DNA of 64,000 nt from Lytechinus pictus (GCF_037042905.1 NC_087254.1:32240001-32304000); one strand, 5' to 3'; positions 9,500 to 38,800 are shown, counted from the stretch's first letter. Numbers and translations: made by a program. Notes: a model not told the origin generated them from the sequence alone.

Positions 9500-10792
9500 T
9501 GTATGGAGTGTATGGAGTTTCCAACAACAGAGCCAATGTCAAGAAAGCATTACTCGATGCTGTGGCTGAAAAGAACACATTTAGTTGGGTTTCTTGCTTT
9601 GCACACAATCTGAAACTAACAGTGCAACATGCAGTGAAGACGCATAAATTTCCTGAGGCGGCCTCAGCGGAAAACATACGACGTCAACATGAGGTTTTCT
9701 GCGAGTGGTGCAGAGAAGTTGGAAGGGTTGCATCATCGTATATGGAGTTTCCGACAACAGAGCAAATGTAAAGAAAGCATTACTCGATGTTGTGGCTGAA
9801 AAGAAAACATTTAGTTGGGTTTCTTGCTTTGCACACAATCTGAATCTAACAGTGCAACATGCAGTGAAGACGCATAAATTTCCTGAGGCGGCCTCAGCGG
9901 AAAACATACGACATCATCATGAGGTTTTCTGCGAGTGGTGCAGAGAAGTTGGAAGAGGGAAGGGTTGCATCATCGTATGTGGAGTTTCCGACAACAGAGC
10001 CAATGTAAAGAAAGCATTACTCGATGCTGTGGCTGAAAAGAAGAAATTTAGTTGGGTTTCTTGCTTTGCACACAATCTGAATCTAACAGTGCAACATGCA
10101 GTGAAGACGCATAAATTTCCTGAGGCGGCCTCAGCGGAAAACATACGACATCATCATGAGGTTTTCTGCGAGTGGTGCAGAGAAGTTGGAAGAGGGAAGG
10201 GTTGCATCATCGTATGTGGAGTTTCCGACAACAGAGCCAATGTAAAGAAAGCATTACTCGATGCTGTGGCTGAAAAGAAGAAATTTGGATGCACACTATC
10301 TGAATCTAACAGCGCAACATGCAGTGAAGACGCATACATTTCCTGAGGCGGCCTCAGCGGAAAACATACGAAGTCAACATGAGGTTTTCTGCGAGTGGTG
10401 CAGAGAAGTTGGAAGAGGGAAGGGTTGCATCATCGTATATGGAGTTTCTGACAACAGAGCCAATGTCAAGAAAGCATTACTCGATGCTGTGGCTGAAAAG
10501 AACACATTTAGTTGGGTTTCTTGCTTTGCACACAATCTGAATCTAACAGTGCAACATGCAGTGAAGACGCATAAATTTCCTGAGGCGGCCTCAGTGGAAA
10601 ACATACAATGTCAACATGAGGTTTTCTGTGAGTGGTGCAGAGAAGTTGGAAGAGGGAAGGGTTGCATCATCGTATATGGAGTTTCCGACAACAGAGCCAA
10701 TGTAAAGAAAGCATTACTCGATGCCATGGCTGAAAAGAAGACATTTGGATGCAAACTATCTGAATCTAACAGTGCAACATGCAGTGAAGACG
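9500..10792 (+). repeat. Tandem array (~5.5 units of 223-237 bp) of a hAT transposase catalytic-core fragment
   Basis: The unit encodes VSDNRANVKKA...SCFAHNLNL; unit markers at 9524, 9754, 9991, 10228, 10451, 10688. Confidence 0.9.
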
Positions 10793-11620
10793 CAACGGAA
10801 CGTATTGCTGAAAATATCTCAAAATATAATAAGAGAAGGAGTATACTGTATGTAGCTTATAACAGCAGCTTTTCAAAATCATCAGGAGACATAGGTCCAC
10901 TTGGATGTGGTCACCATGGTAACTAATAAAGTATTGTTGATACATAGGCTCTTATTCTTGTAAATGTTGTGTTGTCATGGCGCACATGCTTCTCCCAAGT
11001 GTCTACTTTGAAACCATCAAGAGTTGATTGTACACATATTAATGAATTGACATTGAAATTGTTCCATCGGTGCATTATCCATCATTGGTATGAAGGGGAT
11101 GAGTAAATTGGGAATTAATTCCCATCCTCTACAACAATGAATAATTACATTTTCAGTTTGAAAAGTCATACAAAATCCAAGGTTATCTTTACAGCTACAA
11201 TAAATAAAGCTTAAATAACTTGATAAAAAAACTTATTCTTACAAATATATTTAACTGCTTTGCCATCCCACTTGTGCCATCTGCTTGTAGCAACTGAAAT
11301 GGGTTGGGTGGAATGCACATGCAGCAAAAACACAGCAACCTGGATGGAAGGTTTGCTAACAATACTGTTCAAAGATTGGTTTCATACTTCGCGATGAACG
11401 AATGCCACCAACACTGAAAAGTGCAGTCTCATTTATGCACTTTCTTGATGGATACTGCTAAAAATAATAAACAGGGAATATCCGTCAATAGCCAGCTATC
11501 CACGGACTGCTAGTACTCAATATCTTCCAACTTAGGGGGAAAAAAAACACGTAAAAAAAAAATCTCATATAACATAGTCTATGGACCTTACTGACAATCT
11601 TCGTTGTAGTCCCATCTATG

Positions 11621-17800: not shown

Positions 17801-20800
17801 CTCAGCGATATGCAAATGAGAGAGTCGATGATGTCCATCACTCACTATTTCTTTTGTTTTTTATTGTTTGAATTATACAATATTTCAATTTTTACAGATT
17901 TGACAATAAGGACCAACTTGACTTAACCATAAACTGTTAAAATAATGGTAATTCCACATGTTCAGGGAGTAATAAAACTTTGTTTCACATGACAATGGGG
18001 AGAAAATTAGAATTTTTCATATTTCATATAATAAAATACAAAAGAAATAGTGAGTGGGTGACGTCATCAGTCTGCCAATTTGCATACCGTCCAGGATGTG
18101 TATATAACTGTTTTTGTGAAATTAAGCAAAAGTTTAAAATGTCATAACTTTCTTATTTTACATCCGATTTTGATGAAATTTTCAGTGTTTTGCTTGTTGG
18201 ATTTTTCTCCTTTTATTCAAATCAACTTTTTGGTGGGGTGGACTTGTCCTTTAAGAACAGAAATGAAATTGATGAAGAAATGATAGAGAAGAAGCATTAT
18301 TATGATTTATGAATAAATTTCATATAAATAAGCATAAATAATTTTCTAGTTAAAATTTCTAAATTCTGTGAAGAACTTTGCTGAACCTCATGTAGCTCTC
18401 AGATGGAACAAAAAAAATCAAAATCTGTCAACCAATAAATAAGAAGCATTTTTTGGTGTTTTGAAAAATATGCATAAATTAGCATATTTAATGAGTTTTA
18501 AAATTTTGTGTAGAAATTTTGTATCCCCACCTAGAGCTATCATATAAAGCAAAAAAATTGAAATTGATCAACAAGTGAAGGAGAAAAAGCATTTTCTGTG
18601 ATTTATTAATAAATTTTGCATAAATTAACATACCAAATTTTCAAAATCAAAATTTCAAAATTCTGTGTAAACGTTTGGTGAACCTCATGAAGCTCTACCA
18701 GATGGATGAAAAAAAAATCAAAATCGGTCAACAAATAAAGAAGCATTTTATGTGAATTTAGAAAAAAAAACATAAATTAATTTCGCATATACTATTTTTT
18801 ACTAACATAAAAAATTTTCTAGCCAAAATTTCAGAATTCTATGTAGAAGAATGGTGTACCTCACGAAGCTCTACCAGATGGAAGAAAAAATATCAAAATC
18901 GGTCAACAAAGCATTTTTTGTGAATTTTGAAAAATAAGCATAATTACTAAATTAGCATAATAATTTTTCTAGTCAAAATTTCAAAATTCTGTGTAGAAGT
19001 TTGGTGAACCTCATGAAGCTATACCAGATGGAAGCAAAAGAATCAAAATCGGTCAACAAATAAAGAAGAAGCATTTTTTTTAAATGCACATAAATCAGCA
19101 TATCTTTTTGTGAGTTTCAAAATTCTGTGTAGAAGTTTTGAATCCCCCACATACCTAGTGCTATCATATAAAGCAAACAGAATTGAAATCGGACTTGAAA
19201 TGACGAAGAAGAAGCATTTATTAAACAATTATTGTATAAGTACAGAAATCTTTAAAAATACACAATTTATAATAAATCATGGTAAATTTCAGAGCGAATA
19301 GTCGAATATCATAAAAATGATTGAAAAAAAAGAGTGACAATTGGTAAAAACGATCAACCCTAGTTGTCTGTTTCTCAGCATGATTATCACACTTCACCAG
19401 TTCAGTATTCCAAACGTTGCAGCTACTACCAGCCAGTGCCACACTAGAATTAATTCCCACGATACATTGCGATGACACAACAAACATAATTAAAAAAGAA
19501 CCTTTTCAAAAAAGGAAAAAAATAACAATGATACAAACCACTCAAACAATTTCGTACAACACCAATATCACATATTACGCATGTTATTTAAGCAAGACAA
19601 TTACTAAATCCACTAAAGACAAGTAAAGCGCAATATTACACAAACAATCATATCAAGATATCATTTAAGAGAGATACTTTCCAATTTCCATCCAATCCTT
19701 CTCTTTCTCCCCTTTTCAGACTTAGTTTCGCTTGTCAATCCAGCACTCCACTAGCCTCTGGTCGAGGCCCTGGCTGCTTCCCGAGCGAAGCGAGGGATAT
19801 CCTAATTCGCGAAGCGAATTAGCCTGGCGCGAGCCAGGGCCTCTGGACATCTGTACCGAATTTCACCGACTTCCTTTTGTTTCTTATTGTTTTACCAATA
19901 TTCCGACGGTCGGTGAAAATCATCCAATGAGATCGTGGACTGCTTTGACGTCATATTGAATTATTCATGAGCTCATCATGAATTCTGCATGGAGGAAAAT
20001 GGCGACCCGTGGATTCTGGGCAAAGAGTGACAACGAAATATCAAAGAGCATTGAATATGCCTCTAAAATACTGAAAATTAACCAGTTTAAGGATTTGCAA
20101 GTTGATGCAATTAAATATGCACTGAAAGGACGAGATGTGTTTGTAAATCTACCAACTGGATATGGAAAAAGTGTAATCTTTCAAGCGATTCCACTTTGCG
20201 TCGACTATCTCCGACTCCGCGGTGTCGGTGAAAGTGAAACTGAAGGAATTGGTGCTGGCCGATCTCCCGGGAAGTTCCGGGGCGGTGATGGGTCGGTTAT
20301 GGCTACTAGGCCTAGTATTAGTAATACCACTCGTTGTGGCATTTTGCTAGTTATCTCCCCTTTAGTGTCCCTGATGAGAGACCAAGTGAAGTCGTTGAAG
20401 GATCGCGGGCTTCATGCCATTTATGTTGGGGACGCTTCGTCACAAGATAAATTTTTAGAAGGTATGATTTTGATTTTACTTAGCTTAACTGGGCCCAGGC
20501 CATGCCAAGGCCCAAGCAAGGCATTGATTCTGCTCTTCCAATTCCAGTTCTGACTTGTTCAATTGTCCGCACAAACAATCAATTTTAAACAGCCATTTTG
20601 AAAAGATAACAAGAAAAGTTCCATCAATGTTCTGTTGACCATTACTATAAAAAGAATTTCATGTTTCAAGTTGTTACATGTAGGTGCGTAAACTTACCCT
20701 AACAATTTGAAACGTGAGTCTCTTTTTAATTTTTATTTCACAAAATATAGTTTCAGTTAATAATGACAATGTTCCTTAATTATTATGAGTTAGTGTACCA

Positions 20801-23800
20801 AATATCTCATAAAAATTTGAAAGAAATATGGGCTTTCCTGGAAAAAAACCCTTGGGCAGTTCTTTTCAAATTTTAAAAAGAAAAAATCAAATCAATGGTA
20901 TCCCATGTCTGCGCACCCATTCACTTTGCACACGATTCAGTGATTTTGATGAGAAAGGCTGCATTTTCTGGCCGTCACATGGAATGCAAAAAATCACTAT
21001 TTTTCCAGCATTTTGAGTCAGATTTTTAAATGAATATATTATCTGTCATAATATATTGCATGTGTAAAATTTGTGTTCGTTGCGTATCTTCTTTTACTAG
21101 AATCGCGCAGATACGCGTGTGCGCAGACCAGGGGGACCACGCAGACTTGGATGAACTTGCCATACAGTTTTGTGAAGTAGCCATAAGGCTTTAAAATCAA
21201 AATTTTAAATTCATCCGACTGACCGGACAAACTACCCCCCCCCCCACCATCTACATACGCATGATAAAGTCTACATGATGATGTAGTTTTTTAATATCGG
21301 TTGAATTGGTCTAAAGACTCTAAAATGCCAATTTGTCCAATTACCAGCTCGTCTCCTATCATTTGCTATCCGCATGGTCTAATTGCCATTTCTTCCACCA
21401 CCATTTCGTCTTACATGTATAACCAGCTTAATAGTCCAATAGCCATTTAGTCCCTCATGGCATTTTACCCTTTGGTCTATAAATTGGACAACATGTAAGT
21501 TATAATTGGGTGAAATGAATGAAAATAAAATGAACATAGACCAACTGGTTATGAGACCAAATGTTCATAGACAAATTGGAGATTGGATGCAGATGAGTTG
21601 GTATCTGTGACTGTAAGGTTAATTTTGCAGGATAGACCGGAAGTGGTGCATGATTATTTCTCTTCCCTACAATAATTATCATGATGATTTTCCCCCTTTT
21701 TAGCACAGTAAAATAAAACAGATTTATCAGAACTACTGTACAATACATGTGGAAATGATATTGGTCTTGTACATGTATGTCAAACAATAATTTGATGAAA
21801 TATCAAATTACTCAAACTATTATATTTCACACAGGTGGAATTTCATATGTGTTCATGAGTCCGGAGACAGTATTTGGACGAGGTTTCAAGCTTCTTGATA
21901 GCAGCTTCGTGAAGGAGAACTTATGTGCAATTGTTGTAGATGAAAGCCACTGTATAGTGAAATGGTATGTTTTTTTTCCTGTTCCTTTATTAAAATGAGA
22001 ATTGATTTTTCTTGATTGTTGCATCATGCAGTCAAAAGATTAAATGGGCAATCCAAGGCTGAAAATTATCAGACAGATTAACATCTGTCAAACAATGAAA
22101 ATTTCATCAAAATTAGACAAAGAACAAAGGAATGAACAATATGTACACTGTACAGTATTTACTCAATATTGATATTGAATTTGTAAAAGAATCTTATTTT
22201 CGTTTGATCAACTCTGGTGCACAAGTTATGAAATGGGCATAGTTCTACTTTTTTTTTTCTGCACATTCAATTTCAGGGGACAGAACTCAGATAGACTGAA
22301 AGCCTTCCGTAGTGAATATGGACGTCTGGCAGAACTGCGTTCCATGGTGCCATCACAGATACCCGTGGTCGCCCTTACAGCCACCTCTACTATCGCAACA
22401 CGGAAAAACATCTTGACATCGTTGACAATGACGCAGCCAGCCTTAATTACCCTGTCCCCTGATAGGAAAAACATTAAGTACAGTGTAATGGATGTTCCTG
22501 AGAGTGACACTTCATGCATATTTGCAGAACTGTGCAATGAATTGAAGAGAGATGGCAGACAGACTGCCAGGACCATCATCTTCGCCCGCTCTCACAATCA
22601 GTGCAGCGATCTGTATAAGAGTTTTAAGAAGAAGATTAATGATGTGAATTTATTTGCAATGTTCCATCTTACCACAGAGGATTGTCGCAAAGAAGAAGTG
22701 CTTAAGTCATTTGGAGATGAAAACGGTTCCATCCGGGTGTTGTTTGCCACGATGGCATTTGGAATGGGAGTTAATTGTAGAGGAGTTAGGAGAGTGTATC
22801 ATCTTGGCCCTCCCGAGGACATCGAAGATTATGTTCAAGAAAGTGGACGTGTTGGACGAGATGGAGAGGATAGCCATGCAGTACTGATTCTGTTCAAGGG
22901 ATGGAACCGGTGTAAAGTTTCACCAAAAATGAAGGAATATGTGAAGAACGAGGAGATATGCAGGAGGAAGTTTTTGATGGAAACATTTGAGGAAGATGAT
23001 AGAACATCATGTAAAATTATTCCCCATTCATGTTGCGACATCTGTGCTCAAAAGTGTGAATGTAGGGTTGATGATGCCCATACCATCCCCTTTAAATACT
23101 GTGATACAGTTCAGTCCCAGTCCCAACACATGACAACTTGCAGGGATGTGTCGGATGAGGAAAGAGAAGTTCTACTAGACCAGCTTCTGTTATTAAGAGG
23201 TGAAGTTCTTGCGCGAGTGTCTGGGGCAGGTTACACCTTGGCAGGCGCAGATGTGACTTCTGGTATACCGATCAGTGAAGTCGAGGCTCTGGTTAAGAAT
23301 TGTGACAAAATTGACTCGCTTAGCACTTTATGTAATCGTTTTAGTTTTTTTGGTCATGAGGAAGAAATTTGGATTGTTCTAGAGGATACTTTACCCCCAT
23401 CTCAAACTTCTCAATCCATTGCATTACAAGAATTACACCCCACAGTAATTGATGATATAATTGATACAGATGAGTCTGATACAAATGATGAATATGCAGA
23501 AGCAGTTCTCATGTCAGATGCAGAATCTGATAATTAATTTGGATTGTGGTTCATTCATGGACTTTTCCCTTAAGGATATTTGAATCTTAAGACAGTGAAA
23601 CTGTATTTCTAAGACATTATTTACACTGATGTCATGTATGTCTTGTAATGTTATAGCCCTTCAAAATTTCAGTTCAAACATTCAGATTTAATTGGGAGGG
23701 TTACTTTACCGCATTTAGCATTCAACATACATCATTGCTGGTACGTTTTCAATTTGATACATATGTTGCATCATTTGGGTATAAAGGCTGTATGACGTCG

Positions 23801-26800
23801 CAATATTTATAAATACAATGGTAATATAATGGTAAAGTATATTGCATAAATTTTGTGCTAATTTGGCTTGATAAAATACTCATTGATGTGAAAAAATTTG
23901 CATGTACATGTAGTCAGGTGAAATGCTAATGTTGTATGTATATGTTTGCGAAAATAATCCACAGCAAACTGTATGCATGTATTGTGTTAACACTTTGATT
24001 GCTCATACATTTTTGCATTACTCTAGAAAGGTTCATAAAGCTGTAAATCTGTTTTTGATAAATACATTATGATTACACTTTATATGAATTGAATTGTACC
24101 TGAAGAATGAGTATAACAAGCATGAAACTGAAATCCTTTAAAACTTTTTAGCAACACTAAACATGTATATAATGAGCAAGCTGGTGATGTCATTGATCCA
24201 TTTTTCTTTTGTTTTTTTTTAAACATAAAACATTATTCATATTTATACAAATATATAGCTGTGTATTTATTGTAATTATGTAAGATTTACATGTATGCTG
24301 CATCTTTCAAGCTATGTATTCATCCCCTTCAGGAGGAAAGGTAAAATATTGTTCATTACACACATTCATTCAAAAATACAATTTTAAAAAGGATCGCAAT
24401 AAGTTTTATCATGCAGATACATGTGTGTGATATAAATGTTTCACCTGTAATCATTGTTCAAGTTAAAGGAACAAACCTGTACATGTACATGAAATGAAAA
24501 TTCTATTTCTTTTGGTTATGTACATTGCAAACCGGTACATGTATTTGGCCTTTTTTTTTAATGATGAAAAAATATGGCACGCATTATGAATTTGCCCCTT
24601 TTATAAAGAAGTGTGTATTTTTTGGTACACTTTAAATTAACAGGTGGTTAACAGTGGAAAGAAGCTACATGTATGGAGGGATATGTTTGGTGAGATTTAC
24701 CTGAATTTTCAAGTGTTTATGCATTAGACGATTACAAGCAAAAGTGGACATTTTCAAAAAAATTATATTGGCTCTTTCTCAAATCTCGATCATTTTTCTA
24801 TCAAAACTCAAATGGAATTTCATAATACAAAGGGGAACATTATTACATGTAGCCAGAATTTGTTTTTCTTGTAAATGTATCTCCTTTCTGTTGGATAATC
24901 TAAAGGTCATCATTTTAAATCATATTGTAAGAATATTTTCAAATATGAGTTCATTTTACATTGCTTGTATATGGATATTCCAGATGTCACTCTGTAACCG
25001 TCACTCCATACATGTAACTGGGTATAGGTTTACGTTTTAAGTCGTAATTGACAAATACACCAATTTTTAATGTAATGCAGCATATTATGCTAGAACAACA
25101 GAGAATCCAACCAATAACTCAAACTTGTGATAGCCATTTAAAGTTCAGAGTTTGAGGGATATGTTTTATCCTCAAAAATGCATATCCATTATATATGTAA
25201 CCATGTTTAATAATATTCATACAGTATCTCATTAATTGAGTGGATCGCTGAAACAAATGTTATTACTTGTATTTTTAAAGTGAGTTTCAGGAAGTACTGT
25301 AGGGCACCATTTCTTTGCAAATGACGATTTAAATATGGGTGATAAATTTGTTTGAATGCTAAGATTTGTTTCTGAATATCACTCTGTTTGTTTGGAACTG
25401 CCCCATTTATACATGCACATTATTAAATGTTAAGTTCTACCAACTTTTCAGGCAATGAAATAAATGGAATATTTAATTATGTGAACTTCCGTGTTACAAT
25501 CCTAACATGTTATTGGCAAATGCATATTTTTCATGTTTCTGATATTTTGAGTTTTGGGATTCCGACTTGCAGTTGCATCATCTGGACTGGATGGTGAAGG
25601 AGAGTGGGGTTGGTATGGGCACATGTTGAGGAGGGATGGCAGGCATGTTACAAGAAGGGCTTTTGAGTTTGAGGTGGGTGGTTCGAAGGGGAGATGATGT
25701 GGAAGAGGCAAGTGGAGAAGAGTAGGAGGGTTGGGTTGAGGATGAAAGATGCACTGTATCAGGCAAAGTGGAGGGAGGGGGGTAAGGGCCATTGCTGCGA
25801 GTGTGAGGTGAATCAGGCCATACCTGTTCACAGGGACAATCCCGGATTTAAAACTTACTACTAACATTATCTGTATAACCCATATGTTTAAACTTCAAAT
25901 CCACCCTACCAGAAATGGAAAGAGAGAAATCAAGGAACACAATTAAAGGGGTACTTGAGGCTGAATCACCCGTTGTGATTCATGAAGATTTTGCAAAATT
26001 TGAATATTTCTTATTTTATAATACAAAAGAAAGAGTAAGTATATAAAAAAACCATCTCATTTGCCTATCACTATATTGTACATACATGTACATGTAAAGC
26101 TTTTTATGAAAAATAAGCTGAACTTTCAAATGTAAAAACTTTTTTTATTGAAATCAGATCTTGACAAAATTTTCAGGATTAAGCTTGTTTGATCTTTCTC
26201 TTTGTATTCATTCCCATTTTTATGCCATTGACATGCTCTTTAACCCAAAATAGACTGGGCAATTTCGACGCCAAGAAGACGGGGGGGGGGGGGGGTTGAT
26301 TAATCCCCCCTTATGATTTCGGCTGTCAGTTGCACGATCGCAACAAAAATTGGCACGCTCTTTACCTGTGGCATAATCTACACAAGTATAAGATCCAATT
26401 CAGCAAAAAATCTCATTGCTAATAAATTTTGCTAATCTATGCATAAAATCAAGTTTGCTCTAATTAAATAATAATGCTCATAAAATTCTAACTTTTGGTA
26501 CACAGACTCTTTATAGGCATCTGATCAAATGTGCTTTAAAAGAATTTCAACATCACTTTTATTTTCTTATTCAATTTATTATTTTCTAAATTTATTAAGT
26601 ATTTCTTTGTCTTAAGACTTGTTTTTTTATTGTTTTTTCATTGAAAATTGTCTGGGACTTTATTTTGATGGAATTAATTGATTTTAATCGGTAAAATGAA
26701 AAATAATGACACATTAATTAATTTTTGTTAAAAACACTTTGCATTGGATTTTTTCCATTTAAAAATATTCTGTATCCTGGCATATTTTCTCCCATCCTAA

Positions 26801-29800
26801 TATGTTTTCCATATTATTCCATCATTTTTTCATCTACCTAACCACAAAATGAATCTGAAGCAAGACATGTACTGTAATCCTGTCTTCAAAATGACATGCA
26901 CATTAAAAACTCAAACTATGTCACAGAACAAATTGAACAGAGGCAGTGTGATAAAGTTGATAAAGGTTCATCTTTCTGTACCATTTAATAAAAATATGAC
27001 AAATGCTTCATCAATATACAGGTACACCTTGGTACAAACTATGTTATGAATTGTCCTCATCTTTTTTTCACTGTTTAAAATGGAAAAACAAATGTTATTC
27101 CATGTAAAGGAAGACAAATATGAATACGGATAAAATTACTGACAAGATAAAGAGCAATAAGAGAATACTGTCATTCCCTTTGAAAGTTGTCTACATATAT
27201 TGCAATCATATCATGAATACTGATGGAGATACTGTTAAGAATCAGTGCACTAACAAGAACAATTGTACATCCCAGAGAATATAATATTGCAGTTCTTTGT
27301 AAAGTTTGGTAAAACATATTGCAAAAAAGATGATGATAAATACGTATAAAGAGACTGACAAGATAGAGCAAATTGCAAAGGCAATAATATATGTACATCT
27401 TCAGTAGCATCACCTTTACTTTCTTCATGCATGTATAATAGAAGATAATAACCCTTCATATCTACAATACCAATCAACAGATGTATGTGAAATATGATAT
27501 CAGTGAAAAAACACAAAATTATGGAAGGAAGTGCTTTGTTACAACTTTTTGGCATCAAATGAAATGTTTATATTGCATAAATATCAGCTGTATATACTGT
27601 ATGCACATAATCACAAATCTATACATGTATAACAAATTTGTTAGCTTTACAAAATTTACTGAAATTGAAAGAACACAAATTCATATTAACTTTGTACTGC
27701 ACGAAGGGGGGGGGGGGGCTTGCAAGCCCTCCTCTCAACATTTTCTACGCGTTTCACTTTGAAATTTTGCTGAATTTCTTAACTTTGAATCTTTTGAAGT
27801 AATTTTTTTTAAATATTGGACTGTGGTCATGGTGCTGGGCAGTCTTTTGAATGTAAGTGCCCATCATTCTGAAAATGGCGTAAAACCATGATTCTAAATG
27901 TATATCAAAGTGTATACAGAGTTTTCTCACCTAACATGATTGTTTTCAATTTAGCTAAAAATAAATAGGATACAGAGAATTTCAGTAAAATAAATCTTCC
28001 AAAATTAACAAGAAATGTATGTATAAGAAATTTATGAAACAATAATAGTATGAGATAAATTATTACATCCTTTTTTTGCCAATCTGTGTTGACTCATGAA
28101 ATCCTAATATATATAAAGAAAAATCATCAGTGTTAACATGTACCGAAAAAGAAAGAGACAACTGAAAGAGCATTTTAGTGAGTAAAGACTAATCAACTAG
28201 TAATAGCCTCATCTTATTTGCTTTAATGAAATTCCAGTGATGCATGGCAAGGAAGTAGACCTACGTTTTGATTGACCTTTAGAGTGTTGTCCATTCCATT
28301 TGAAATCAGTATACTTGAATCATGACGACAACTGTTGTACAACTAAAACATTTAAAGCTAAATGATAATAGTTGCTGTAAAACACTAATTTCGTGAGAAA
28401 GTCTGTAAAACCAAGGTTAAGTAACTATATCATCGTGGATGTAGATCTGGTACAGTTACATAAACTGAACTTCGTGAAATCATAAACTCTAAGCTGAAAT
28501 ACGATCACACTGAAGATCGCCAACACAGATAGGCACACGTGGGACAGTGTATTTTTATTGCTGGAATAAAGACCCGATGAAAGTGACGGAATCCGCGCTT
28601 ATTTTGCTTATTACTCAGCAATTACACAATTTCTTCCAGAATCCTTTGGCACATATTTTTTATTCATACAAACAGACACTTAGGTGGTCATTATATTAGA
28701 TTCTGTAAAGTCATTTTGAGATTGTTACCAGAACTGGAATTTATCTTTAATGTCAATTTGAGAAGTAAAACTATTTTCAAATCTTGTACATTTACAGATA
28801 AATCAAGCTTTTTTAGGACAAACAATTTAAATACATTTTCCACGAGGAATGCTTCAGCGCAACCAAGAATGTGAAATGATGAAAAATGTTCATGTTGGCA
28901 AAATGGCAAAAAAGCTAAGTGTCACATATACATCACACATTGCCAAATAATGATAAAGCTTTATATCACTAAATAGAAGTTCAAAAAATAAAATACAATA
29001 CATACATATGCACAGTTAATGTATATCCAAAGATAAATTTCTTTTATGAAATCAACTTCCAATGAGGTGCTCGGGTTGCAGCAAATAATTCCTATCACCT
29101 ACTCAAATGAAACATTGCTTTAAGAAATAAACCAAAAGCTGATGTGAATGTTTAAATACTAAATTTGAAAAATTCCTTTAAAAAAAAAATAAGTGAAGCT
29201 GTGTGCATTGTTCACTTGGCTGGTTCATATCATATACACACCTTTAGTGGAACAGTCAGTTATTCTTGCTGATACAATTAAAAACACAGTTATAAATAAT
29301 CTTATATATATATATCTATATATATGTATATAAAATGTCATACAGAAAATATAGGAACTATTCTCATACTTGTAATGTTACATGAGTTAAAAAATTTCTC
29401 AGATATATCATGCAGAATTATGTTCTTGAAACAAGCCGTGAATGCATGTACCATCATCAGCCATATGTCACCAACTGTTCCCCTGCAATGTAAGGCGGCT
29501 TTTCATGTTAAAGAGCATGCACTTTACAGAATATAAAATGAAATGTACTTTCATATAAATCATGGACACCAGTATATACCATGATAATATAAAATTTTCA
29601 AAATAGAAAAGATAGTTGTATCATGACAATTTTCAAATGTCTTTGTTATGTATAAGATAGTAGGATACCTGTAAGCATTTCACTAACATGTCATTAACAC
29701 TGTAAATAAACATCTACCAGCCAAGTAATAAAGGTAGGTCAGATATGAAGAAAAATTCATTAGAAAGCAAAGTCTTTCAACTTTTTTGACATCCATGATC

Positions 29801-32800
29801 TCAGACTAGCTAGATTGAGCCTGGAAAGAGGGTTCAGAGGAAAGGAGGGGAAAGCATGATGATGCCTCGAATCCTTTTCAGAGAAGATTTGTTCTCTGTG
29901 CATGTGATGGGCCAATCTCTGCACGTCTTCACTCAGATCTTTTTTCTTGTGTGCACCCTTATACGCCCGGGTCTGAGTACCTTCATCCACCTTGGTAAGA
30001 ATTTTTTCGGAGGTTTGTGCTGAATGACTGACTCTCGCGACACTCGCCTTTGAGACTTTACCATGAAATTGGCGGTATTCTTCTTTGAAGATGCGGTTGT
30101 GGTGTTCATTTTCTCTGTCTAGTTCAACATTTGTGTCTTCTTTCCCCACATTGTTAACCACTCTATTCCAAATGAGTTGGTGTGCCAATCGTGGGGAAAG
30201 AAGACACTTTACCTGCGCAAGTAGCCTCAGACTGTGTAGGGCATACTTAGTCTTCCCTTCTAGCTTAAAGTAAAGCACAAAGTACTTGTACAGCCTGATG
30301 ATACGAGCACCATCTCCATATTTTCTCGCATCTTCGAAGTCCATCCACAACAAACACATACCAAGGGCTGCCGAGCTGTAATTAAACATCGAATCCTCTG
30401 TGTTGGTGCTTGTAGTTTGTTTGCTGGGCTCGTTTGAATGTTGTTGCTCTGTATGTTTCTGTAGACTTCTCTGATGAACGTATTCTTTGTTACAGAGTGG
30501 GCAGACGAATTTCGAAGCTCTGTCAAAATGTGGGCCCTCATGAATTGCATACCTGTCCACCAGACGGCCCAGTTGCTCTTTGACCTCATCCGCAACATTT
30601 GTAGAATCCTTGTCAATTATATTTCGAGTTGGTTGTGAATTAACATCTTCCATGCCAAAATGATGCAATGCTGCTGCAACAATGAGGGACTCTGAATATC
30701 GTGTCAGGAACTCGACTGACGCATTGACATCTTTCAACGGACTTGCAGGAACATTCGTTGCCCTGAGAAAATTCCTGGAAGCGTAAAGTGTCCCAGGGTC
30801 TCTAGCTGACTTTGTAGAGTACAACACTTTCCATATAACCTGAAAGAACAAATATTCATGATTGAATTAACTTCATATTTGATGCAAGTGGACATGCGTA
30901 AAAAAACAAGAGCATTGGTTGACTGTAATGTGAAGATGTGGGTATCTATCTACCTATCTGTCTACCTATCTATCTATCTACTGTATCAATCAATCTATCC
31001 ATCCATTTTTTATTCNNNNNNNNNNNNNNNNNNNNNNNNNNNNNNNNNNNNNNNNNNNNNNNNNNNNNNNNNNNNNNNNNNNNNNNNNNNNNNNNNNNNN
31101 NNNNNNNNNNNNNNNNNNNNNNNNNNNNNNNNNNNNNNNNNNNNNNNNNNNNNNNNNNNNNNNNNNNNACCTAGCTAACAATTACTGCATGATTGTGAGA
31201 GAGCTACGGCCTTTCATGTCTATAATCGGACAGCCCTTAACTATTCACTTACAAGTTTTGTCCATTGATTACAAACTAAAATTAGAAAAATGTACGGGAG
31301 GGTCATCAGTGTGTTTTAGTATAATTATTTGCAAATTCTGTGTGAATTTGAAGTAAAAAAAAACACAATCACTTTACATTCCAATAAGATAACAAACGCA
31401 CAACAATAGAAATGATATGAAGGGATGAGATATTAACAGTCTTCATTATTGCAGTTGTATAAAATCATACATATTTTAAAGTGAAAGATTGGAGAAGAAA
31501 TATGAAATCCTGGTGAGATGATTTTGTGAATGAAAATTGTCTAAAAACTGACTAATTACTACAGAATTTCTCAGTCTTTTTATGTTGTGTAATATCTTAA
31601 TGTCAAATATCAGTGTGGTAATCATCACATGTTTAGTAGCTAAAAAATATATTACACCTGTAATTTCCTTACCGCCCCCCCCCCCCCTATTTGCCGATTG
31701 AAAAAGTCATTTGAATATTTAAAAAATAAGAGTAAAATAGAAAAAGAGTATGGCACTAAACTAAACAATTACTACTCCTTTAAAATTAGTAGAAATTGTA
31801 AAATAGTATAACTATTTTATACCTCTAGAAAATTGGCCATGGCATGGAAATCATCAATGACTGGAATGACGCCTTCCCATTTGCTTGCAGAGGATGTGCT
31901 GTCCTGCCTGTCCTTTTTTGCATTGACCTGTCTTTCACAAGTTAGTAAGTCTCCTCCGCTGAGAGTTGGGATCTGCACATTGCTGTCCTTCATCATAGGG
32001 ATGTAAGCATTCATCTTGTCGAGGATGGCAACAATCCCTTCATGAGTATTTTCATTTTCTGTGATGACGCCCAAGTTAACCTGATGGAAATAATATCAAA
32101 CAAATAACACATCAAGCATGCATAACAGAATACATGTATGATTTTCCTACATTATTATTAGATTCAATACAACATACATGCATTAAAAATGACTGACAGT
32201 GTGACTTCTACAAAATCAAGCCTATTTTAAGTAGGCTATGATTCTTTAATATTATATTTGATATTACTTCAAACCTTCCATGTGATATCCATTGGCAAAT
32301 TACCTTACACTGAAACACACTACTCAGAATTAAATTTCATTTTCATACCTGAATTTATAAATTTGTAGGAGACATCTTTCGCATCTGGCAAATATATTTA
32401 TTGGCTAAGTTTTCTTATGTGTGCATTGTATCAAATGCTACTTAAAGAATGATTAAACACTTACAACAGTGCTCTTCTGTTTGGTCTTGTCCATGTACTC
32501 ATGTTTGATTTTCGTCTCAGTAAACTCCGCCATCCATGAGAGTGCTGGTATGTTTTGTGTCACTACTCGAGCCACAAGCGTTGCCCATTCATCTCTCAAA
32601 TGGTTGTTATCCTCTGGGGAGGGCAGGAACATGTTCAAGGAAGCATCCTCAACATTCATAGCAGGTGCGACGTCTGACAGGCTGAAATCAGCTATTCGGT
32701 TTTTTACCGCGAGGAATTGGTAGAAGTGCAGGTCCTGCCCTTTGTCCTCCATGGATGCTTGCCTTGGCTTGACCTTCACATCTACGTTGTCCCCGTTCAG

Positions 32801-35800
32801 GATATATCCTGGATGACGGCTGGCATTCAGAGATTCCAGTTCACTTGCTGCAAGAACATCCCCCTTGGCCAGCCTCTCTCTCAGCTCTTTTTCAGATCTA
32901 GCTTCCTCCTCCACTTCCTCCTTCCACTGCTTTACTTCGGCATCAAAGCCCTCACCTAGGTGTGTCTGCCGCCTTAATGTACTTTTGTACGATACTGACA
33001 GTCCTCTCCCCTGAAGACGAGCAAATGTCTTTGACGACGCTCCCCCTCGTTTGAGGGCCAAAGATGTAAGGGTTTGGGAAGCATTCATCTCCCTGTTTCG
33101 AAGATATAACACTGTCCCTGCAGCTGCCAATACTCCAGGGATTATTGTGCCAGAAGACTTTGATTTTCGTTTGTCCAACCTGGGATTGGTGGCAGCAGCC
33201 TGAAGGCATGTCAGAAGAACTGGGGCTTTTTCCTTCAATTCTGCTTCTTGTTTATCGAAAGAAAACTCCTGAAAACCAAAAAATTATCAAGATATTTAGA
33301 ATCAGTACTTCATGAAAATCTGGCTGAAATTTACAACTGCATACAGTAAATACCAGCCTATGTGACATTACAATGAAAAGCATATTGGGTACAGCTCATA
33401 AAATTGAGTTCTTGTTCCCCCCACACATGCTCCCCCTCCCCTAGAATTTTTGAAAACTGAAAAAAAAAACGTATAGAAAATGTTGTCATGAGCATCATAC
33501 TCTAGATGTAAAGTGCTTCAAAACAGCGTTATCACTCTTCAAATTATGAAAATTTTCTTGTACAGTGACTGTTAGCTCCCAACACTGTTAATCTCTAACA
33601 CAATCTTCCATGACATTATATGAAATTCAAAAGTTTGGCTGTAGGTTGAGATAAATAAATGATGTGTTCAATGACATAACATGGGTCTTAAAAATCCAGT
33701 GTTCAAGTCAATATGCACAAATTATTCTTCTTGTGATTCAAGTTGTAATTTTTTGTTTTAGCAAGGTACCGGTATGCATCCTGCATGTCCATAATTTTAA
33801 AAAGTGCTATTCAGCTTGCACTTTGCGCTCACATCAATTGTTAAGTCAGATACCCATCCTGTTCATGGCTACAAAATGTGTTTACAAACAGCGGCCAACT
33901 ATCATCTCAGAATATCTTTTACAATTACAACTCACGAATCACCATCAAATTATTTATTTGATGAGGTATTATGATTCCTTGCAAACATTCCTTAAAGGTA
34001 GAGTCCACCCCAGAATAATGTTGATTTGAATAAATAGAGAATATCAAACTAGCAAAATGCTTAAAAATTCATCAAAAATCAGATCAATAATAAAGTTATG
34101 AGATGTTAACATTTTGCTTATTTTTCATAAAACAGTGATATTCATATTCATAATTCAATGACATGAAAATGAGACAGTTGATGATGTCCTCTCTGTATCT
34201 TTTATATTTGATTTTTTTACAGATTCGACAATAAAGACCAAATAGTATTAAACAATGCTAATTCCACATGTTCATGGAGGAATTAATTGTTTTACTTGAC
34301 AATAAGGAAAAAAAATATGATTATATCATATTTCATATAATAAAATGAAAAGAAGAAACGAGTGGATGATAGTCTCCTCATTTGCAAACCGACCAGGATG
34401 TGCTTGAAACTATTTTGTAAATTAAGCAAAATTTTAACATGTCATAACTTTCTTGTTTTACATCCGATTTTGATGAAATTTTCAGTGATATGGTTGTTGG
34501 ATTTTTCTCTTTTTACTCAGATCAACTTTTTGTTGGGGTGGACTTGTCTTTTAACAAGTCCCTTTTTCAAGTCAGTAGGGCCTATATTAAAAATTTTAGC
34601 TTGTGCTTGTTATATGAAATAAGCATAAATGATCTGTTGCCCTCCATTTGCAACCCCCCCCCCCCCCCGTTTAAAAATCATGGTGCGACTGTCTTTATGT
34701 TGCATCTGAGTGTATATGTATAAGACGCTCATACAAATGATATTACTAATAATCAATAAATATTATATTCTCATTTCGTAAAACACTTTACGACGTAAAT
34801 ATTCTTTTGGAGTGAACGCCTCAAATATGCTTTAAAAAACAACAATATACTTACTTGTAAAGCTTCCTTGCTTTTGTTTCGGAAAGTTGATTGGTTGTTC
34901 TGTATGCCACACAGGTAGGAACATTCTGCACTGATCTCCTTTGACAGACACTCGTTGAATTCACTACGTAGAAGTGGTGATGATGTCACATGGTGAACGA
35001 CAGTGTGGAGATCACCTCGATCCAAAGCCGTATGAAGTTCATCTATCATTACAGAAGTTGGCGGAGTGGGTTTTGCCAAGTCCTGTAATGTGAGCAATGC
35101 ATGGATATGTAATTAAAAGTTTCAGAATTACTTTAACCATGCATTAGGGTAGCACTATTTCATTCATGACTATGATTTTAAAAAAAAAAAACATGGAAAT
35201 ATTTTATGACAATCTCAGTTTTATTTGTGTCCATCAAAGACGTAAATCCTTGCGTCACACCTAGGCTATTCATGGAACGGGGGTGATCTATTGTTGCACC
35301 CCCCCCCCCCCCACACTTATAGCATGATGTCATAGGTTTAAGCACATGGTGTTAAAGTATGAGATATTACGCAATTCTATGAGGTAAATTTAATTTAGCA
35401 AGGGGTTATGGTGACAGTTATTTAAGATGATTAATTTGTCTGTAAGGAAATGGATTCTCAATTAGCAGAAAAGAAAATTAATGAACAAAAATTCTTAAAG
35501 TGACACGTACCTCTTCTCTTGTTTTTTCTTTGAATTGGAGCTGCTTTCTCTTGACTGTTGGGGCACATATGATCGGATTAACTGACAAAGTCAAACTCAA
35601 AGGGCTTGTTGCTGCTGTGGACTTTCCAGTTCCAGACCGTTTCTGCTGCCTCATCAATTTGGATGGGCTTTCAGTGATCATCCGCTTAACTCGTCCTTCC
35701 GGTAGATCTTCATCTTGATTCTTTGGCTTTGCAATCATAGTTTTCAGCTCAAGTGCTGATGGATCATCATTTGATGTTATTTTGTTTACTTTATTTTTGC

Positions 35801-38800
35801 ATACACCACAAATCTTCTTGCACAAAAAATCTGTGTTTCTTTCAGATAACTCATTTAACTTTGAGGAGATTTCATCGTCAACAATGCAATATTTCTTAAA
35901 CAAAATTACGTTTCTATTGCACACACAACACACACGGTCAGTTGCTCTGGGACGTCCTCTTCCCGGCCGTATCACGACGGGTTTTGTAGGGGTAACGTTA
36001 GGTACGTTGACCTTACCAGCAAGCAGCATCGTGACATGGACTCGAAATAACTTGTTGATAAATCATACTGTCTCAGCTAACTAATGTCCAATAATTTATC
36101 AGATCGTCTTGAAAAAAGCGTGGTCCATCCAACACAAATATACATCCAAAACTTTCTATAATTCAGTGGAAAATCTATATTGAAAGTGAAACATCAACAA
36201 TAGACAACATGAAAACTCCAACTCAATCGAAAGTGTTCACACACGTGTTCGCAAAATCAGCTGTGTTTTGGAAATACATTTGTCTTAGTCTTTATCTCTG
36301 TACGTATTTCCGTCTAATATTTGACACCCGAACAACATACAGTACTTTTTAGCATCTAGTCCATGATTTCACTCTGTTTTCTTCTAGAGAGTGACTTTAT
36401 CAAAGACTAAACAAAACTTCCAAGACGGAGGGAAAGACTCGTCCACAATTGAGCAAAGAGACGGGGGTGAAAATAGGGATACGTTTCATATTATTCTTCA
36501 AAATAGATATTCAATACAATTCAACTTTAATTTCTTTAATGCTAGATTTTGTAAAAGTAATGAAAATACTGTTTTTGTCAGAAAATGATTTTTCAATGCA
36601 TTAAAAAAAAAAAAAATCTTCCACAATTAAATCGATCCCCTGCAAAATAGTGGACTATTCCAAACCACGGACGAAACAGCTTTGACATTTCATTGGTCAA
36701 TTTACGAGGTGAACGTTAAATATTCATGAGCTCATCTATATTCATTAGGAAGACGTGCCTCATGAATATATAATTCGGTACAGATGTCCAGAGGCCCTGG
36801 CTCGCGCCAGGCTAATTCGCTTCGCGAATTAGGATATCCCTCGCTTCGCTCGGGAAGCAGCCAGGGCCTCGACCAGAGGCTAGCACTCCACCAACATAAC
36901 CAGGCAGTCCCTGCCTTTCTTTTCAGGACCACAAAGTAAACAGTATCTTGTTGCATTCTACACCAGTCATCAAATCCCATTCCCAGTCCTGAAGCTAAGT
37001 ACACATTCATGATATTTCGGTTGAATTCAACCAATCTACACAATCATAACGTAATGTACTTGCCTATCGGTAAGGTTCTTTTCCACAATTAGAAGTTAGA
37101 ACACATACAGGGATCATCATGATCACGGAAAAACAGTAGTCAAGACTGAGAAAACTGTGTGCATTCCTCCCTATGTCAGCCAGCAATCAAACTGAAAGCA
37201 TGGACTTACTACAACTAAAACCAAGGGCCATGCTGGATTTTTTGAGCCAGTATGCTTGCTCAGTTCATGTGATCTTTTCTTCTAACCCTGCTATCCCATA
37301 ATAACTTATTTTATCCATCCCATCATGACAGGTCCACCTTCCCAAATGATGTTGACCAGACCACAATTCTCAGGGGGCACGATGGAAGAATGTTAATGTC
37401 TTTTTGGGAGGGCTCCCTTAGCTATTCTCCCAACCACTCCCTGACTAAGACCCCGTTCTCATTACACTTTCTAAAACTAGCTTACTAGAAACCAGTTTGG
37501 AATATCGCTTTGCTAGCTTTCCCATTTGATCACCTGAATGTGGTTTTCAAAATTACTTCACGTAAAGCGGTCTTGTTGCTATAAGAACGCTCTCAGTGGG
37601 GTGACACCGCATCATCATAGGCATTCTACACACATTGTGTAGAGTAGCACGCACTAAATGTGCGAAGATCGCTTTCCGAAGAATGATTGTCTCCTCACGT
37701 ACGCTAAAACCAGTTTCACGAGGCAAAGTGATCTTGAACTACATCGCGAGGTGGTTTTATGAACCGGTTTGGAAGATCACTTCCAAGATCGCTTCGACCG
37801 TTAAAGGACAAGTCCACCCCAACAAAAAGTTGATTTGAATAAAAAGAGAAAAATCCAACAAACTTAACACTGAAAATTTCATCAAAATCGGGTTTAAAAT
37901 AAGAAAGTTATGACATTTTAAAGTTTTGCTTAATTTTACAAAACAGTTATATGCACATCTTGGTGGGTATGCAAATGAGGAGACTGATGACGTCATCCAC
38001 TCACTATTTATTTTGTATTTTATTACGTGAAATAGGGAATATTCTATTTTTCTCCTCATTGTCAAATGAACAGCGATTAATTCCTCCCTGAACATGTGGA
38101 ATGAGCATTGTTTAATACTATATGATTCAGTCAAGTTTGTCCTCATTGTCAAATCTATAAAAAATGAAATATTGTATAATTCAAACAATAAAAAAAAAAT
38201 AGTGAGGGACATCATCAACTTTCTCATTTGAGTTGTTCATATCACTGTTTTGTGGAAAATAAGCAAAACTTTAAAGTGTCATAACTTTCTTATTTTACAT
38301 CCGATATTGATGACATTTTCAGCGTTTTGCTAGTTTGATTTTTCTCTATTTATTCAAATCAACATTTTTATGGGGTGGACTTGACCTTTAAGCTAGTTTC
38401 CAATAAACTAGTTTTAGGAAGGTAGTGAGAACGGTGTCTTAGTCTTCAGGCACAGACCCTAATTAAAACTTTACTCAACAAGATGGTCATAAAACCAACT
38501 TACCTCCATGATCTAGCACAATACAACTTGTTATAATGGTGATAATTGCATTTTTGTATTAAAAAATGCAACATACATGTAACACATAGTTCAATTCAGC
38601 CCCGGGCCATGAAGGCTTGAAATTCAGACCACTTCAGTGTGTTTTGACAAACCGAGGGCTTGTGCCTGTAGATATTTGCTAGACTAAAGTCGCCCCCCCC
38701 CCCCCCCGGGAGGGGGGGGGGGCAGTCAAATATATTGCTGTACACACTCGTGAACAAAGAAACGCGTTTAAAGGGGTGTTTTTTTTTTTCAGTTTTGGAC

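What the first reader, a model, noticed from the sequence alone, without database searches (positions are those of the whole stretch)
19752..36882. Intact autonomous transposon pairing a DDE transposase with its own RecQ helicase
Seen: identical 111-bp TIRs, a perfect 9-bp TSD, and two spliced genes with no disruption (617-aa RecQ-like helicase, 962-aa transposase) pointing inward from the two ends. Established: this layout and the 9-bp TSD match the AcademH lineage of Academ transposons, so the lineage itself is known. As far as I know its mechanism and the role of the helicase have not been shown experimentally. Inference: this is a recent, probably mobile copy, a ready two-component system for biochemical reconstitution.
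Basis: partly seen in the sequence, partly recalled or inferred. Interest (0 to 1): 0.9.

Follow-up and report, generated by a model that had tools for sequence, protein, structure and literature searches.

The report
Intact helicase-carrying AcademH transposon, sea urchin
This is a complete 17-kb jumping gene of a known but never experimentally studied kind (AcademH) in the sea urchin Lytechinus pictus; both its genes are open and its transposase RNA is correctly spliced, which makes it a usable study object but not a new kind of element.

Summary
Window 19752-36882 is a 17,131-bp element with 112-nt perfectly complementary ends and an exact 9-bp duplication (GCACTCCAC). It carries two convergent genes with six GT..AG introns: a 624-aa (617 from Met8) RecQ-like helicase and a 962-aa transposase of Pfam family DUF6589.

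The assembly gap lies inside transposase intron 4. Contigs from two RNA-like runs skip that intron exactly, with no mismatch. Homologues align without a gap across the junction. The exons on both sides of the gap are single-copy. The frame is therefore continuous.

The genome is Lytechinus pictus. This is its only full-length copy. There are also three truncated right-end copies (about 1%, 2.4% and 8% diverged) and hundreds of ~930-bp derivatives, of which 19 of 20 checked have exact 9-bp duplications.

The same helicase/DUF6589 gene pair occurs in a brittle star and a mussel. A confident model of a paralogue shows a DDE transposase fold closest to P element and hAT.

The layout fits AcademH, a published lineage, so this is a new member of a known kind. 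"Recent and probably mobile" is only partly supported. Identical ends are not a clock, no empty site could be tested, and the helicase's first exon was not found in RNA.

The scan noted two other Academ-like elements in this genome; I did not check them.

The parts
19743..19751 (.). Left copy of the 9-bp target site duplication, GCACTCCAC
   Evidence: Read directly; identical to 36883-36891.
19752..19862 (+). Left terminal inverted repeat. It starts TAGCCTCTGG, contains two GCCTCTGG motifs and nested internal palindromes.
   Evidence: 100% complementary to the right arm over 112 nt. As a single strand it folds better than shuffles, z = -3.3. Motif comparison.
19978..20461 (+). Helicase exon 1 (aa 1-161/162). 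Carries Walker A PTGYGKS (aa 59-65) and motif Ia.
   Evidence: Open frame with a GT donor. Pfam DEAD, E = 2.3e-9. Collinear with full-length homologues. Not found in the RNA runs.
20730..21171 (.). Nested ~440-bp high-copy repeat inside helicase intron 1
   Evidence: About 82% identical to many genomic copies; 2754 first-look candidates.
21835..21964 (+). Helicase exon 2, with motif II DESH (aa 197-200)
   Evidence: AG acceptor and GT donor. The RefSeq model P0001 starts at the Met in this exon and uses the same exon 2-3 junction.
22277..23537 (+). Helicase exon 3: motifs III-VI, the RecQ zinc-binding module, a unique C-terminal ~200 aa with an acidic tail, and the stop codon
   Evidence: Pfam Helicase_C, E = 3.2e-16, and RecQ_Zn_bind, E = 8.5e-8. 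Best solved relatives are BLM, WRN and RecQ.
23538..29759 (.). 6.2-kb AT-rich spacer between the two 3' ends. No third gene was detected. It contains a nested ~400-bp repeat at 28352-28750.
   Evidence: No frame longer than 130 aa. The ten longest open frames (76-130 aa) have no Pfam hit. No XPG_I match in the element. The nested repeat is 95% identical to many copies.
29760..30839 (-). Transposase exon 5 (aa 604-962): helical insertion domain with a C2H2 finger (C716-H737), then the D844/E848 helix; stop codon
   Evidence: Pfam DUF6589, E = 6.7e-26, profile positions 154-410 of 410. Single-copy in the genome. Held in full by RNA-like runs X1-X4.
30840..31822 (-). Transposase intron 4. It contains the assembly gap 31016-31168 and a (TATC)n microsatellite.
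   Evidence: GT..AG. Skipped exactly by contigs of X1 and X2. TRF result.
31823..32080 (-). Transposase exon 4 (aa 518-603), with the second catalytic Asp candidate D561 (GGDLL)
32465..33268 (-). Transposase exon 3 (aa 250-517), with the first catalytic Asp candidate D409 (GDNVD)
   Evidence: Single-copy in the genome.
33884..34679 (.). Nested high-copy, highly transcribed repeat inside transposase intron 2
   Evidence: Very high depth with many variant letters in all four runs. Matches other loci at 67-82%.
34855..35082 (-). Transposase exon 2 (aa 174-249)
35511..36029 (-). Transposase exon 1 (aa 1-173), with CxxC...CxxC cysteine pairs; likely the DNA-binding part. No Pfam match.
   Evidence: The intron 1 junction is seen in X2.
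36030..36771 (-). Transposase 5' UTR, promoter and subterminal region. RNA-derived contigs reach about 36420-36470.
   Evidence: Depth table and record 11. The inner ~150 bp (36621-36771) is shared with the MITE family.
36772..36882 (-). Right terminal inverted repeat
36883..36891 (.). Right copy of the 9-bp target site duplication, GCACTCCAC

Best explanation
It is a structurally complete autonomous DNA transposon of the AcademH type in Lytechinus pictus. It sits in an intron of a coiled-coil host gene.

Shown here:
- Perfect 112-nt TIRs and an exact 9-bp TSD.
- Two open convergent genes.
- A transposase mRNA spliced at all four predicted junctions.
- A predicted DDE (RNase H-like) fold with a helical insertion domain.
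- A helicase with all RecQ core motifs.
- Relatives of the family that inserted with exact 9-bp TSDs.

Inferred mechanism:
- The transposase binds the repeated GCCTCT(G/T)G motifs at the tip and inner edge of each TIR through its N-terminal cysteine-rich region.
- It cuts the ends with the D409/D561/E848 site.
- It joins them to target strands cut 9 bp apart. Repair of the stagger gives the 9-bp duplication.
- The RecQ-like helicase acts as an accessory. Most likely it unwinds the palindrome-rich, cruciform-prone TIRs or the flanking/target DNA, so that the ends can be synapsed, cleaved or repaired.

The family was active recently: a truncated copy is about 1% diverged and the MITEs are about 1.8% from their consensus. 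Whether this particular copy still moves is not shown.
For: Structure: TIR, TSD; gene models; six GT..AG introns.

Domains:
- Pfam gives DEAD, Helicase_C and RecQ_Zn_bind for the helicase and DUF6589 for the transposase.
- The best solved relatives of the helicase are BLM, WRN and RecQ.
- Motifs PTGYGKS, DESH, TATS and [10 protein letters not shown] are all present.

Transposase fold:
- The AF2 model of paralogue P0122:300-946 has pLDDT 91.8 and pTM 0.90.
- D409 and E848 are near-invariant columns in the 18-sequence alignment. D561 is read from the conserved G-D motif in the same alignment. All three fall on beta1, after beta4 and on the post-insertion helix of the model.

Expression and the gap:
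- Contigs of X1 and X2 skip introns 4, 3 and 2. X2 also skips intron 1. There are 0 mismatches.

Two-gene unit elsewhere:
- Amphiura has a helicase followed 6 kb away by a convergent DUF6589 gene.
- Mytilus has the same arrangement, 4.4 kb apart.

Family activity:
- 697 first-look TIR candidates; all 40 scored are at least 91% identical.
- 19 of 20 ~930-bp derivatives have perfect 9-bp TSDs.
- The derivative is a fusion of right-end and left-end sequence that includes part of helicase exon 1.
- Truncated copies differ by 1.07% and 2.4% in substitutions.

Literature: AcademH means 9-10-bp TSD plus a helicase (PMC10045372). Academ is a DDD/E superfamily (PMC9587614).
Against: - It is the only full-length copy in the assembly, so there is no copy-to-copy proof of recent transposition of the autonomous form.
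- The flanks are unique, so no empty site is available.
- Helicase exon 1 is not held by the RNA runs that hold the transposase. The RefSeq model lacks it. A full-length helicase mRNA is therefore unproven.
- Two deep RNA-seq runs show almost no exon coverage, so expression is low or restricted.
- The abundant MITEs derive from a different master (75-84% identity). They carry T where this copy has G in both TIR motifs.
- The transposase runs in the same direction as the host gene, so its transcription could be host-driven.
- Academ membership rests on layout and Pfam DUF6589, not on a comparison with Repbase sequences.
- The catalytic triad is inferred from an alignment and a model of a 42%-identical paralogue.
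Confidence: 0.85

Rival explanations
1. The element is intact in sequence but no longer mobile. It would be a silenced or helicase-deficient last copy. The transposase RNA would be a by-product of host-gene transcription, and the MITEs and truncated copies would be the work of a now-lost sister element.
For: - Single full-length copy.
- Helicase exon 1 absent from the RNA runs, and the RefSeq model is truncated.
- Near-zero exon depth in two 20-Gb RNA-seq runs.
- The MITE ends are only 75-84% like this copy and differ at the TIR motifs.
- The transposase has the same orientation as the host gene.
Against: - 1,586 codons are free of stops or frameshifts, and every catalytic motif is present.
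- All six splice sites are canonical.
- The TIRs are perfect and the TSD is perfect.
- A truncated sister copy differs by only ~1%.
- The transposase mRNA is spliced to the complete ORF, and coverage starts inside the element.
Confidence: 0.4
2. The pair is a domesticated host gene pair (a RecQ paralogue plus a transposase-derived gene) that merely keeps old transposon ends.
For: - Single copy, intact and transcribed.
- A different DUF6589 gene of L. pictus (P0122) has a more than 90% identical counterpart in L. variegatus. So conserved DUF6589 genes may exist in this genus.
Against: - Perfect 112-nt TIRs and an exact TSD would not persist in an old immobile locus.
- No protein at least 50% identical to this transposase is in the representative library.
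- No helicase above 45% identity exists in any other species, including the annotated congener.
- Sister copies at 1-8% divergence lie at other loci.
Confidence: 0.05
3. It belongs to another helicase-bearing group (KolobokH, a Helitron-like element), or it is a chance composite of two nested elements rather than AcademH.
For: - Kolobok lineages also carry RecQ helicases (PMC9587614).
- No direct comparison with Repbase Academ sequences could be made.
- The fold resembles P element and hAT.
Against: - From my own knowledge of Kolobok, not from a paper read here: it makes 4-bp TTAA TSDs. KolobokH fuses the helicase downstream of the transposase and is known only from fungi (PMC9587614).
- Here the TSD is 9 bp in this copy and in 19 of 20 relatives, and the genes are separate and convergent.
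- Helitrons have no TIRs or TSDs, and their Rep protein carries a Pif1-type helicase domain (PF05970; PMC10799480).
- Pfam matches only DUF6589, with no hAT, P-element or KDZ model.
- The same gene pair and orientation recur in two other phyla.
- The MITE's left end keeps helicase exon 1 sequence next to the TIR, so the helicase is an original part of the element.
Confidence: 0.05
4. The element is an assembly chimera: the gap at 31016-31168 joins halves of two different copies.
For: A gap of estimated length lies inside the element.
Against: - Exons on both sides of the gap are single-copy in the genome.
- They are joined in one 2,652-nt RNA-derived contig with 0 mismatches, in two runs.
- The junction is collinear with homologues.
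- The two TIRs and the TSDs match perfectly.
Confidence: 0.02

Closest known systems
AcademH lineage of the Academ superfamily of eukaryotic DNA transposons (Kojima 2020, Mob DNA 11:15; not held in the library, cited through PMC10045372 and PMC10799480)
   Same: - TIR-bounded element with a separate SF2/RecQ-like helicase gene beside the transposase gene.
- 9-bp TSD; AcademH makes 9 or 10 bp.
- No XPG nuclease.
- Occurs in an animal.
- Low copy number of the autonomous form.
   Different: - This is a new family in Lytechinus pictus. No protein at least 50% identical is in the public sets searched.
- It is unusually long (17.1 kb), because of a 6.2-kb spacer and nested repeats in the introns.
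- It has very long (112-nt), internally palindromic TIRs.
- Sequence-level membership of the transposase in Academ could not be tested here.
AcademX lineage (Academ elements with an XPG nuclease)
   Same: Presumably the same transposase superfamily.
   Different: AcademX makes 3-4-bp TSDs and encodes XPG rather than a helicase (PMC10045372). Here the TSD is 9 bp and no XPG_I match lies in the element.
KolobokH and Kolobok-1_CCri (Kolobok elements with a RecQ helicase)
   Same: A DDE transposon that has recruited a RecQ-family helicase (PMC9587614).
   Different: - Different transposase family.
- In KolobokH the helicase is fused downstream of the transposase, and the lineage is known only from fungi (PMC9587614).
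- The Kolobok TSD is 4 bp (my own knowledge), against 9 bp here.
P element and hAT (Hermes) transposases; Transib/RAG1
   Different: - About 10% sequence identity and no shared Pfam model.
- No THAP, BED or hAT dimerisation domain.
- The TSD is 9 bp, against 8 (P, hAT) or 5 (Transib).
- None of these carries a helicase.
Cellular RecQ helicases (BLM, WRN, RECQ1/5, bacterial RecQ)
   Same: The helicase core motifs I-VI and the zinc-binding module are present. The best PDB E-values run from 5e-28 (BLM) to 1e-20 (RecQ).
   Different: - No RQC or HRDC domain.
- A unique C-terminal region with an acidic tail, shared with the transposon-linked homologues.
- It scores higher against transposon-linked helicases of other phyla (251 and 141 bits) than against any solved cellular RecQ (101 bits or less).

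Membership tests
AcademH | Target site duplication of 9 or 10 bp | tested here: met
   Exact 9-bp TSD at this copy. 19 of 20 related ~930-bp copies have exact 9-bp TSDs at the same TAGCCTC...GAGGCTA boundaries. Criterion taken from PMC10045372.
AcademH | A superfamily II (RecQ-like) helicase encoded inside the same element, separate from the transposase | tested here: met
   - A 624-aa ORF inside the TIRs with DEAD, Helicase_C and RecQ_Zn_bind.
- The same pairing with a DUF6589 gene occurs in Amphiura and Mytilus.
- The MITE's left end keeps helicase exon 1 sequence.
AcademH | Transposase belongs to the Academ DDE clade | not testable with these tools
   No Repbase or Dfam sequences are available, and Kojima 2020 is not held. 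Indirect support:
- Only Pfam DUF6589 matches.
- DUF6589 clusters are common in molluscs and cnidarians.
- Academ is reported as abundant in bivalves (PMC10294476).
- DUF6589 is reported as enriched in pathogenic fungi in a Puccinia striiformis study (10.1101/2025.10.24.684071).
AcademH | DDE/RNase H-like catalytic core with the acidic triad intact | tested here: met
   - The model of a 42%-identical paralogue has pLDDT 91.8.
- The top 16 structural matches, and all but two (UvrC) of the top 36, are DDE transposases.
- D409 and E848 are near-invariant in the alignment, and D561 lies in the conserved G-D motif. All three are present in the window protein.
- The triad assignment is inferred from topology, not from coordinates.
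AcademH | Terminal inverted repeats | tested here: met
   112 nt, 100% complementary.
AcademX | XPG nuclease domain and a 3-4-bp TSD | tested here: not met
   No XPG_I match inside the element in a whole-genome scan. The ten longest open frames of the spacer have no Pfam domain. The TSD is 9 bp.
KolobokH | Kolobok transposase with the helicase fused downstream | tested here: not met
   The two genes are separate and convergent, and no Kolobok-type Pfam match was found. Criterion from PMC9587614. In addition, the TSD is 9 bp here, against the 4-bp Kolobok TSD that I recall from my own knowledge.
Helitron | No TIRs and no TSD; a Rep protein with a Pif1-type helicase domain | tested here: not met
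   TIRs and a TSD are present. The helicase is RecQ-type. No Rep domain was found.
Host RecQ orthologue (BLM/WRN/RECQ1/4/5) | Conserved orthologue across related species, with RQC/HRDC or other accessory domains, and not inside a mobile element | tested here: not met
   - The best non-self protein is 42-45% identical, and no high-identity L. variegatus protein was found.
- No RQC or HRDC domain.
- It lies between the TIRs.
- A formal tree with cellular eukaryotic RecQs was not built.

The most novel reading that the evidence does not exclude
The helicase is mechanistically required, not just an accessory. The long TIRs are nested palindromes that must be melted or extruded by the RecQ-like enzyme before the P/hAT-like DDE core can act, possibly through a partly single-stranded or panhandle intermediate. 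Such an intermediate would explain three things:
- why both TIRs of this copy stay identical;
- why both carry the same derived base at both GCCTCT(G/T)G motifs;
- why helicase-bearing Academ elements make 9-10-bp rather than 3-4-bp duplications.
This would be a helicase-dependent variant of DDE transposition not described for any eukaryotic element.
Probability: 0.12. Interest if true: 0.7.

Novelty: new member of a known kind. Interest (0 to 1): 0.35.

Why it matters
- No Academ element has been studied at the bench. None of the papers I found that mention AcademH reports an experiment, and the transposase has no solved relative by sequence.
- This copy gives exact, uninterrupted coding sequences for both proteins, verified splice junctions for the transposase, defined ends, and a natural set of short derivatives that can serve as substrates.
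- The host, Lytechinus pictus, is now bred and made transgenic in the laboratory (PMC11361634).
- It therefore makes two questions practical: what the helicase does, and why the TSD is 9 bp. These are specialist questions, and the lineage itself is already published.
- A possibly active endogenous DNA transposon also matters for transgenic L. pictus lines.

Tried and rejected
- Kojima 2020 could not be read by DOI or PMC id, nor Yuan and Wessler 2011. The defining features of AcademH are therefore taken from secondary citations.
- A literature search for DUF6589 gave one passing mention. A search for Academ with 'sea urchin' returned only noise from 'academy/academic'.
- Empty-site test: both 400-bp flanks are unique in the assembly, so there is no paralogous or haplotig empty site.
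- A third gene was looked for in the 6.2-kb spacer and not found.
- The helicase homologue of Apostichopus has no called DUF6589 neighbour within 10 kb. P0024 could not be located.
- dN/dS between this copy and the truncated copies was dropped: too few changes (2 in 747 nt for C6).
- A C/DxxH signature like that of hAT, P, MuDR and Kolobok was considered at DDFH (aa 593-596). The first position is not conserved among homologues, so I do not claim it.
- Pfam scans of flanking ORFs gave only sub-threshold hits.

Full report
**Observation**

The ends are as described. The repeat finder gives arms 19751-19862 and 36772-36883, 112 nt and 100% complementary. Reading the sequence shows the element running TAGCCTC...GAGGCTA from 19752 to 36882. 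GCACTCCAC lies directly outside both ends, at 19743-19751 and 36883-36891. A 9/9 match at fixed positions has a chance of about 4e-6.

**Gene models**

On the + strand, three exons (19978-20461, 21835-21964, 22277-23537) give an open 624-aa protein. Both introns are GT..AG.

On the - strand, five exons (36029-35511, 35082-34855, 33268-32465, 32080-31823, 30839-29760) give an open 962-aa protein with four GT..AG introns.

The two genes converge on a 6.2-kb AT-rich spacer. In the spacer I found no frame longer than 130 aa, no Pfam domain and no XPG match.

**The assembly gap**

The gap, 31016-31168, lies inside transposase intron 4 (30840-31822), beside a (TATC)n microsatellite. Three independent lines show that the two sides are continuous and in frame.

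- First, contigs of two public runs of the same species (X1, X2; library type not on record) lie on exon 5, then skip exactly 983 bases to exon 4. They then skip introns 3 and 2. X2 also skips intron 1. All of this is with 0 mismatches. Because the contigs are spliced at canonical sites, they come from RNA.
- Second, an alignment with 17 homologues runs through the exon 4/5 junction without any gap.
- Third, exon 3 and exon 5 each occur once in the 812-Mb assembly, so the halves cannot come from different copies.

I did not look for the gap's letters anywhere.

**Organism and annotation**

The helicase's last two exons are 100% identical to RefSeq LOC135155823 of Lytechinus pictus. That model starts at a Met in exon 2 and uses my exon 2-3 junction.

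The exon 1-2 junction is supported only by collinearity with full-length homologues. The RNA-like runs that hold transposase exon 5 completely do not hold helicase exon 1.

The transposase is not in the public protein sets: the best representative is 44-45% identical.

**What the proteins are**

The helicase has DEAD, Helicase_C and RecQ_Zn_bind domains. It carries motifs PTGYGKS, DESH, TATS and [10 protein letters not shown]. Its best solved relatives are BLM, WRN and RecQ. It has no RQC or HRDC domain, and it has a unique acidic-tailed C-terminus shared with its nearest relatives.

The transposase matches only Pfam DUF6589 and has no solved relative by sequence. I modelled the core of a 42%-identical L. 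pictus paralogue (P0122:300-946) with a 61-row alignment that included the window's exons. The result was pLDDT 91.8 and pTM 0.90.

The residues that fall on beta1, just after beta4, and on the helix after the insertion are D409, D561 and E848 of the window protein. D409 and E848 are near-invariant among homologues. D561 lies in a conserved G-D motif. All three are present here. The triad is an inference from topology.

**Is the pairing real?**

- In Amphiura filiformis, the 617-aa helicase homologue is followed 6 kb away by a convergent 973-aa DUF6589 gene, inside a host intron.
- In Mytilus californianus, the same arrangement occurs with a 4.4-kb spacer.
- An Apostichopus homologue has no called partner within 10 kb.

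**Copies in the genome**

The L. pictus genome has hundreds of TIR matches: 697 first-look candidates, and all 40 scored are at least 91% identical. Most belong to a ~930-bp derivative family. Of 20 copies checked, 19 have exact 9-bp TSDs at the same boundaries.

The derivative's consensus is 262 bp of right end (84% identical to this copy) fused to 620 bp of left end (75% identical). The left-end part includes part of helicase exon 1. So the helicase gene sat next to the left TIR in the derivative's ancestor too. The 20 copies checked, which are the best TIR matches, lie about 1.8% from their consensus.

Three truncated right-end copies exist on other chromosomes. Counting substitutions only, C6 differs by 1.07% and C13 by 2.4%. 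C7 is about 8% diverged by BLAST identity, which counts gaps.

This window holds the only full-length copy.

**How recent, how mobile**

Identical TIRs are not a clock for a cut-and-paste element, because both ends travel with it. What bears on age is:

- the perfect TSD;
- the absence of any lesion in 1,586 codons;
- a sister copy only ~1% away.

Against present mobility stand:

- the single full-length copy;
- the missing evidence for helicase exon 1 in RNA;
- near-zero exon coverage in two deep RNA-seq runs;
- the fact that the abundant derivatives come from a different master.

This copy has G where the four other right-end sequences compared (C6, C13, C7 and the derivatives' right-type end) have T, at both GCCTCT(G/T)G motifs, and it has G in both TIRs. 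This looks like concerted change of binding sites.

The flanks are unique, so no empty site could be examined.

**Comparison with what is known**

A TIR element with a separate RecQ-like helicase, a 9-bp TSD and no XPG fits AcademH as described by Kojima 2020, which I could read only through citations (PMC10045372, PMC10799480). Academ is listed among the DDD/E superfamilies (PMC9587614) and is abundant in bivalves (PMC10294476).

KolobokH, Helitrons and host RecQ genes each fail defining features. Sequence-level membership of the transposase in Academ could not be tested without Repbase.

**Verdict**

It is a new family of a known lineage.

It is valuable as a clean, partly RNA-verified template for the first biochemical work on Academ transposition in a tractable sea urchin. 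It is not a surprise to a transposon specialist.

Noticed in passing
G000 loci L005-L030 (e.g. L006:1501-2445): A ~930-bp non-autonomous family, with hundreds of candidates, made of right-end plus left-end sequence of a relative of this element. Nineteen of the 20 copies checked have exact 9-bp TSDs. Its two TIRs have diverged from each other (92% and 76% identical to this copy's TIR). The 20 copies checked lie about 1.8% from their consensus.
   Followed up: partly
G000:C6:25404565-25407783, C13:23485480-23488740, C7:29696134-29697781: Three copies that keep only the right end (TIR, transposase exons 1-2 and part of intron 2). No left end lies within 18 kb for C6 and C13. Those two break 66 bp apart, at window 33688 and 33622. 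How one-ended copies arose is unexplained.
   Followed up: partly
window 19752-19862 and 36772-36882: At both GCCTCT(G/T)G motifs of each TIR, this copy has G where the four other right-end sequences compared (three truncated copies and the derivative consensus) have T. That is four concerted sites. The TIR is also a nested palindrome with two GCGAAGC hairpin cores and folds better than shuffles (z = -3.3).
   Followed up: partly
G000:C5:55934865-55955932: A second, different helicase plus DUF6589 element or gene pair: transposase 41% and helicase 31% identical to this one, convergent, about 17 kb apart. Its transposase is probably the annotated XP_054758519 (42% to this one), though I did not map that protein to the locus. 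That protein has a more than 90% identical counterpart in L. variegatus, so it may be a shared young family or a conserved gene.
   Followed up: no
window 20730-21171, 28352-28750, 33884-34679: Three nested small repeats lie in helicase intron 1 (about 82% to its family, 2754 candidates), in the spacer (95%, 6257 candidates) and in transposase intron 2 (very highly represented in RNA runs). None touches an exon.
   Followed up: partly
window 15036-15350, 44870-45208, 46350-46790 (- strand): Coiled-coil-like open frames on the minus strand on both sides suggest that the element sits in an intron of a host coiled-coil gene, in the same orientation as the transposase gene. There are no Pfam hits above threshold.
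   Followed up: partly
window 9481-10926 and 42572-43667 (+ strand): A tandemly repeated ORF segment with weak DUF659 similarity, and ORFs with weak DUF4371 similarity. Both are sub-threshold hints of hAT-like transposase relics.
   Followed up: partly
window 20209-20320 (helicase aa 78-115): A 25-40-aa insert between helicase motifs I and Ia that most homologues lack. It is open in frame. Whether it is coding or an unrecognised small intron is not known.
   Followed up: no
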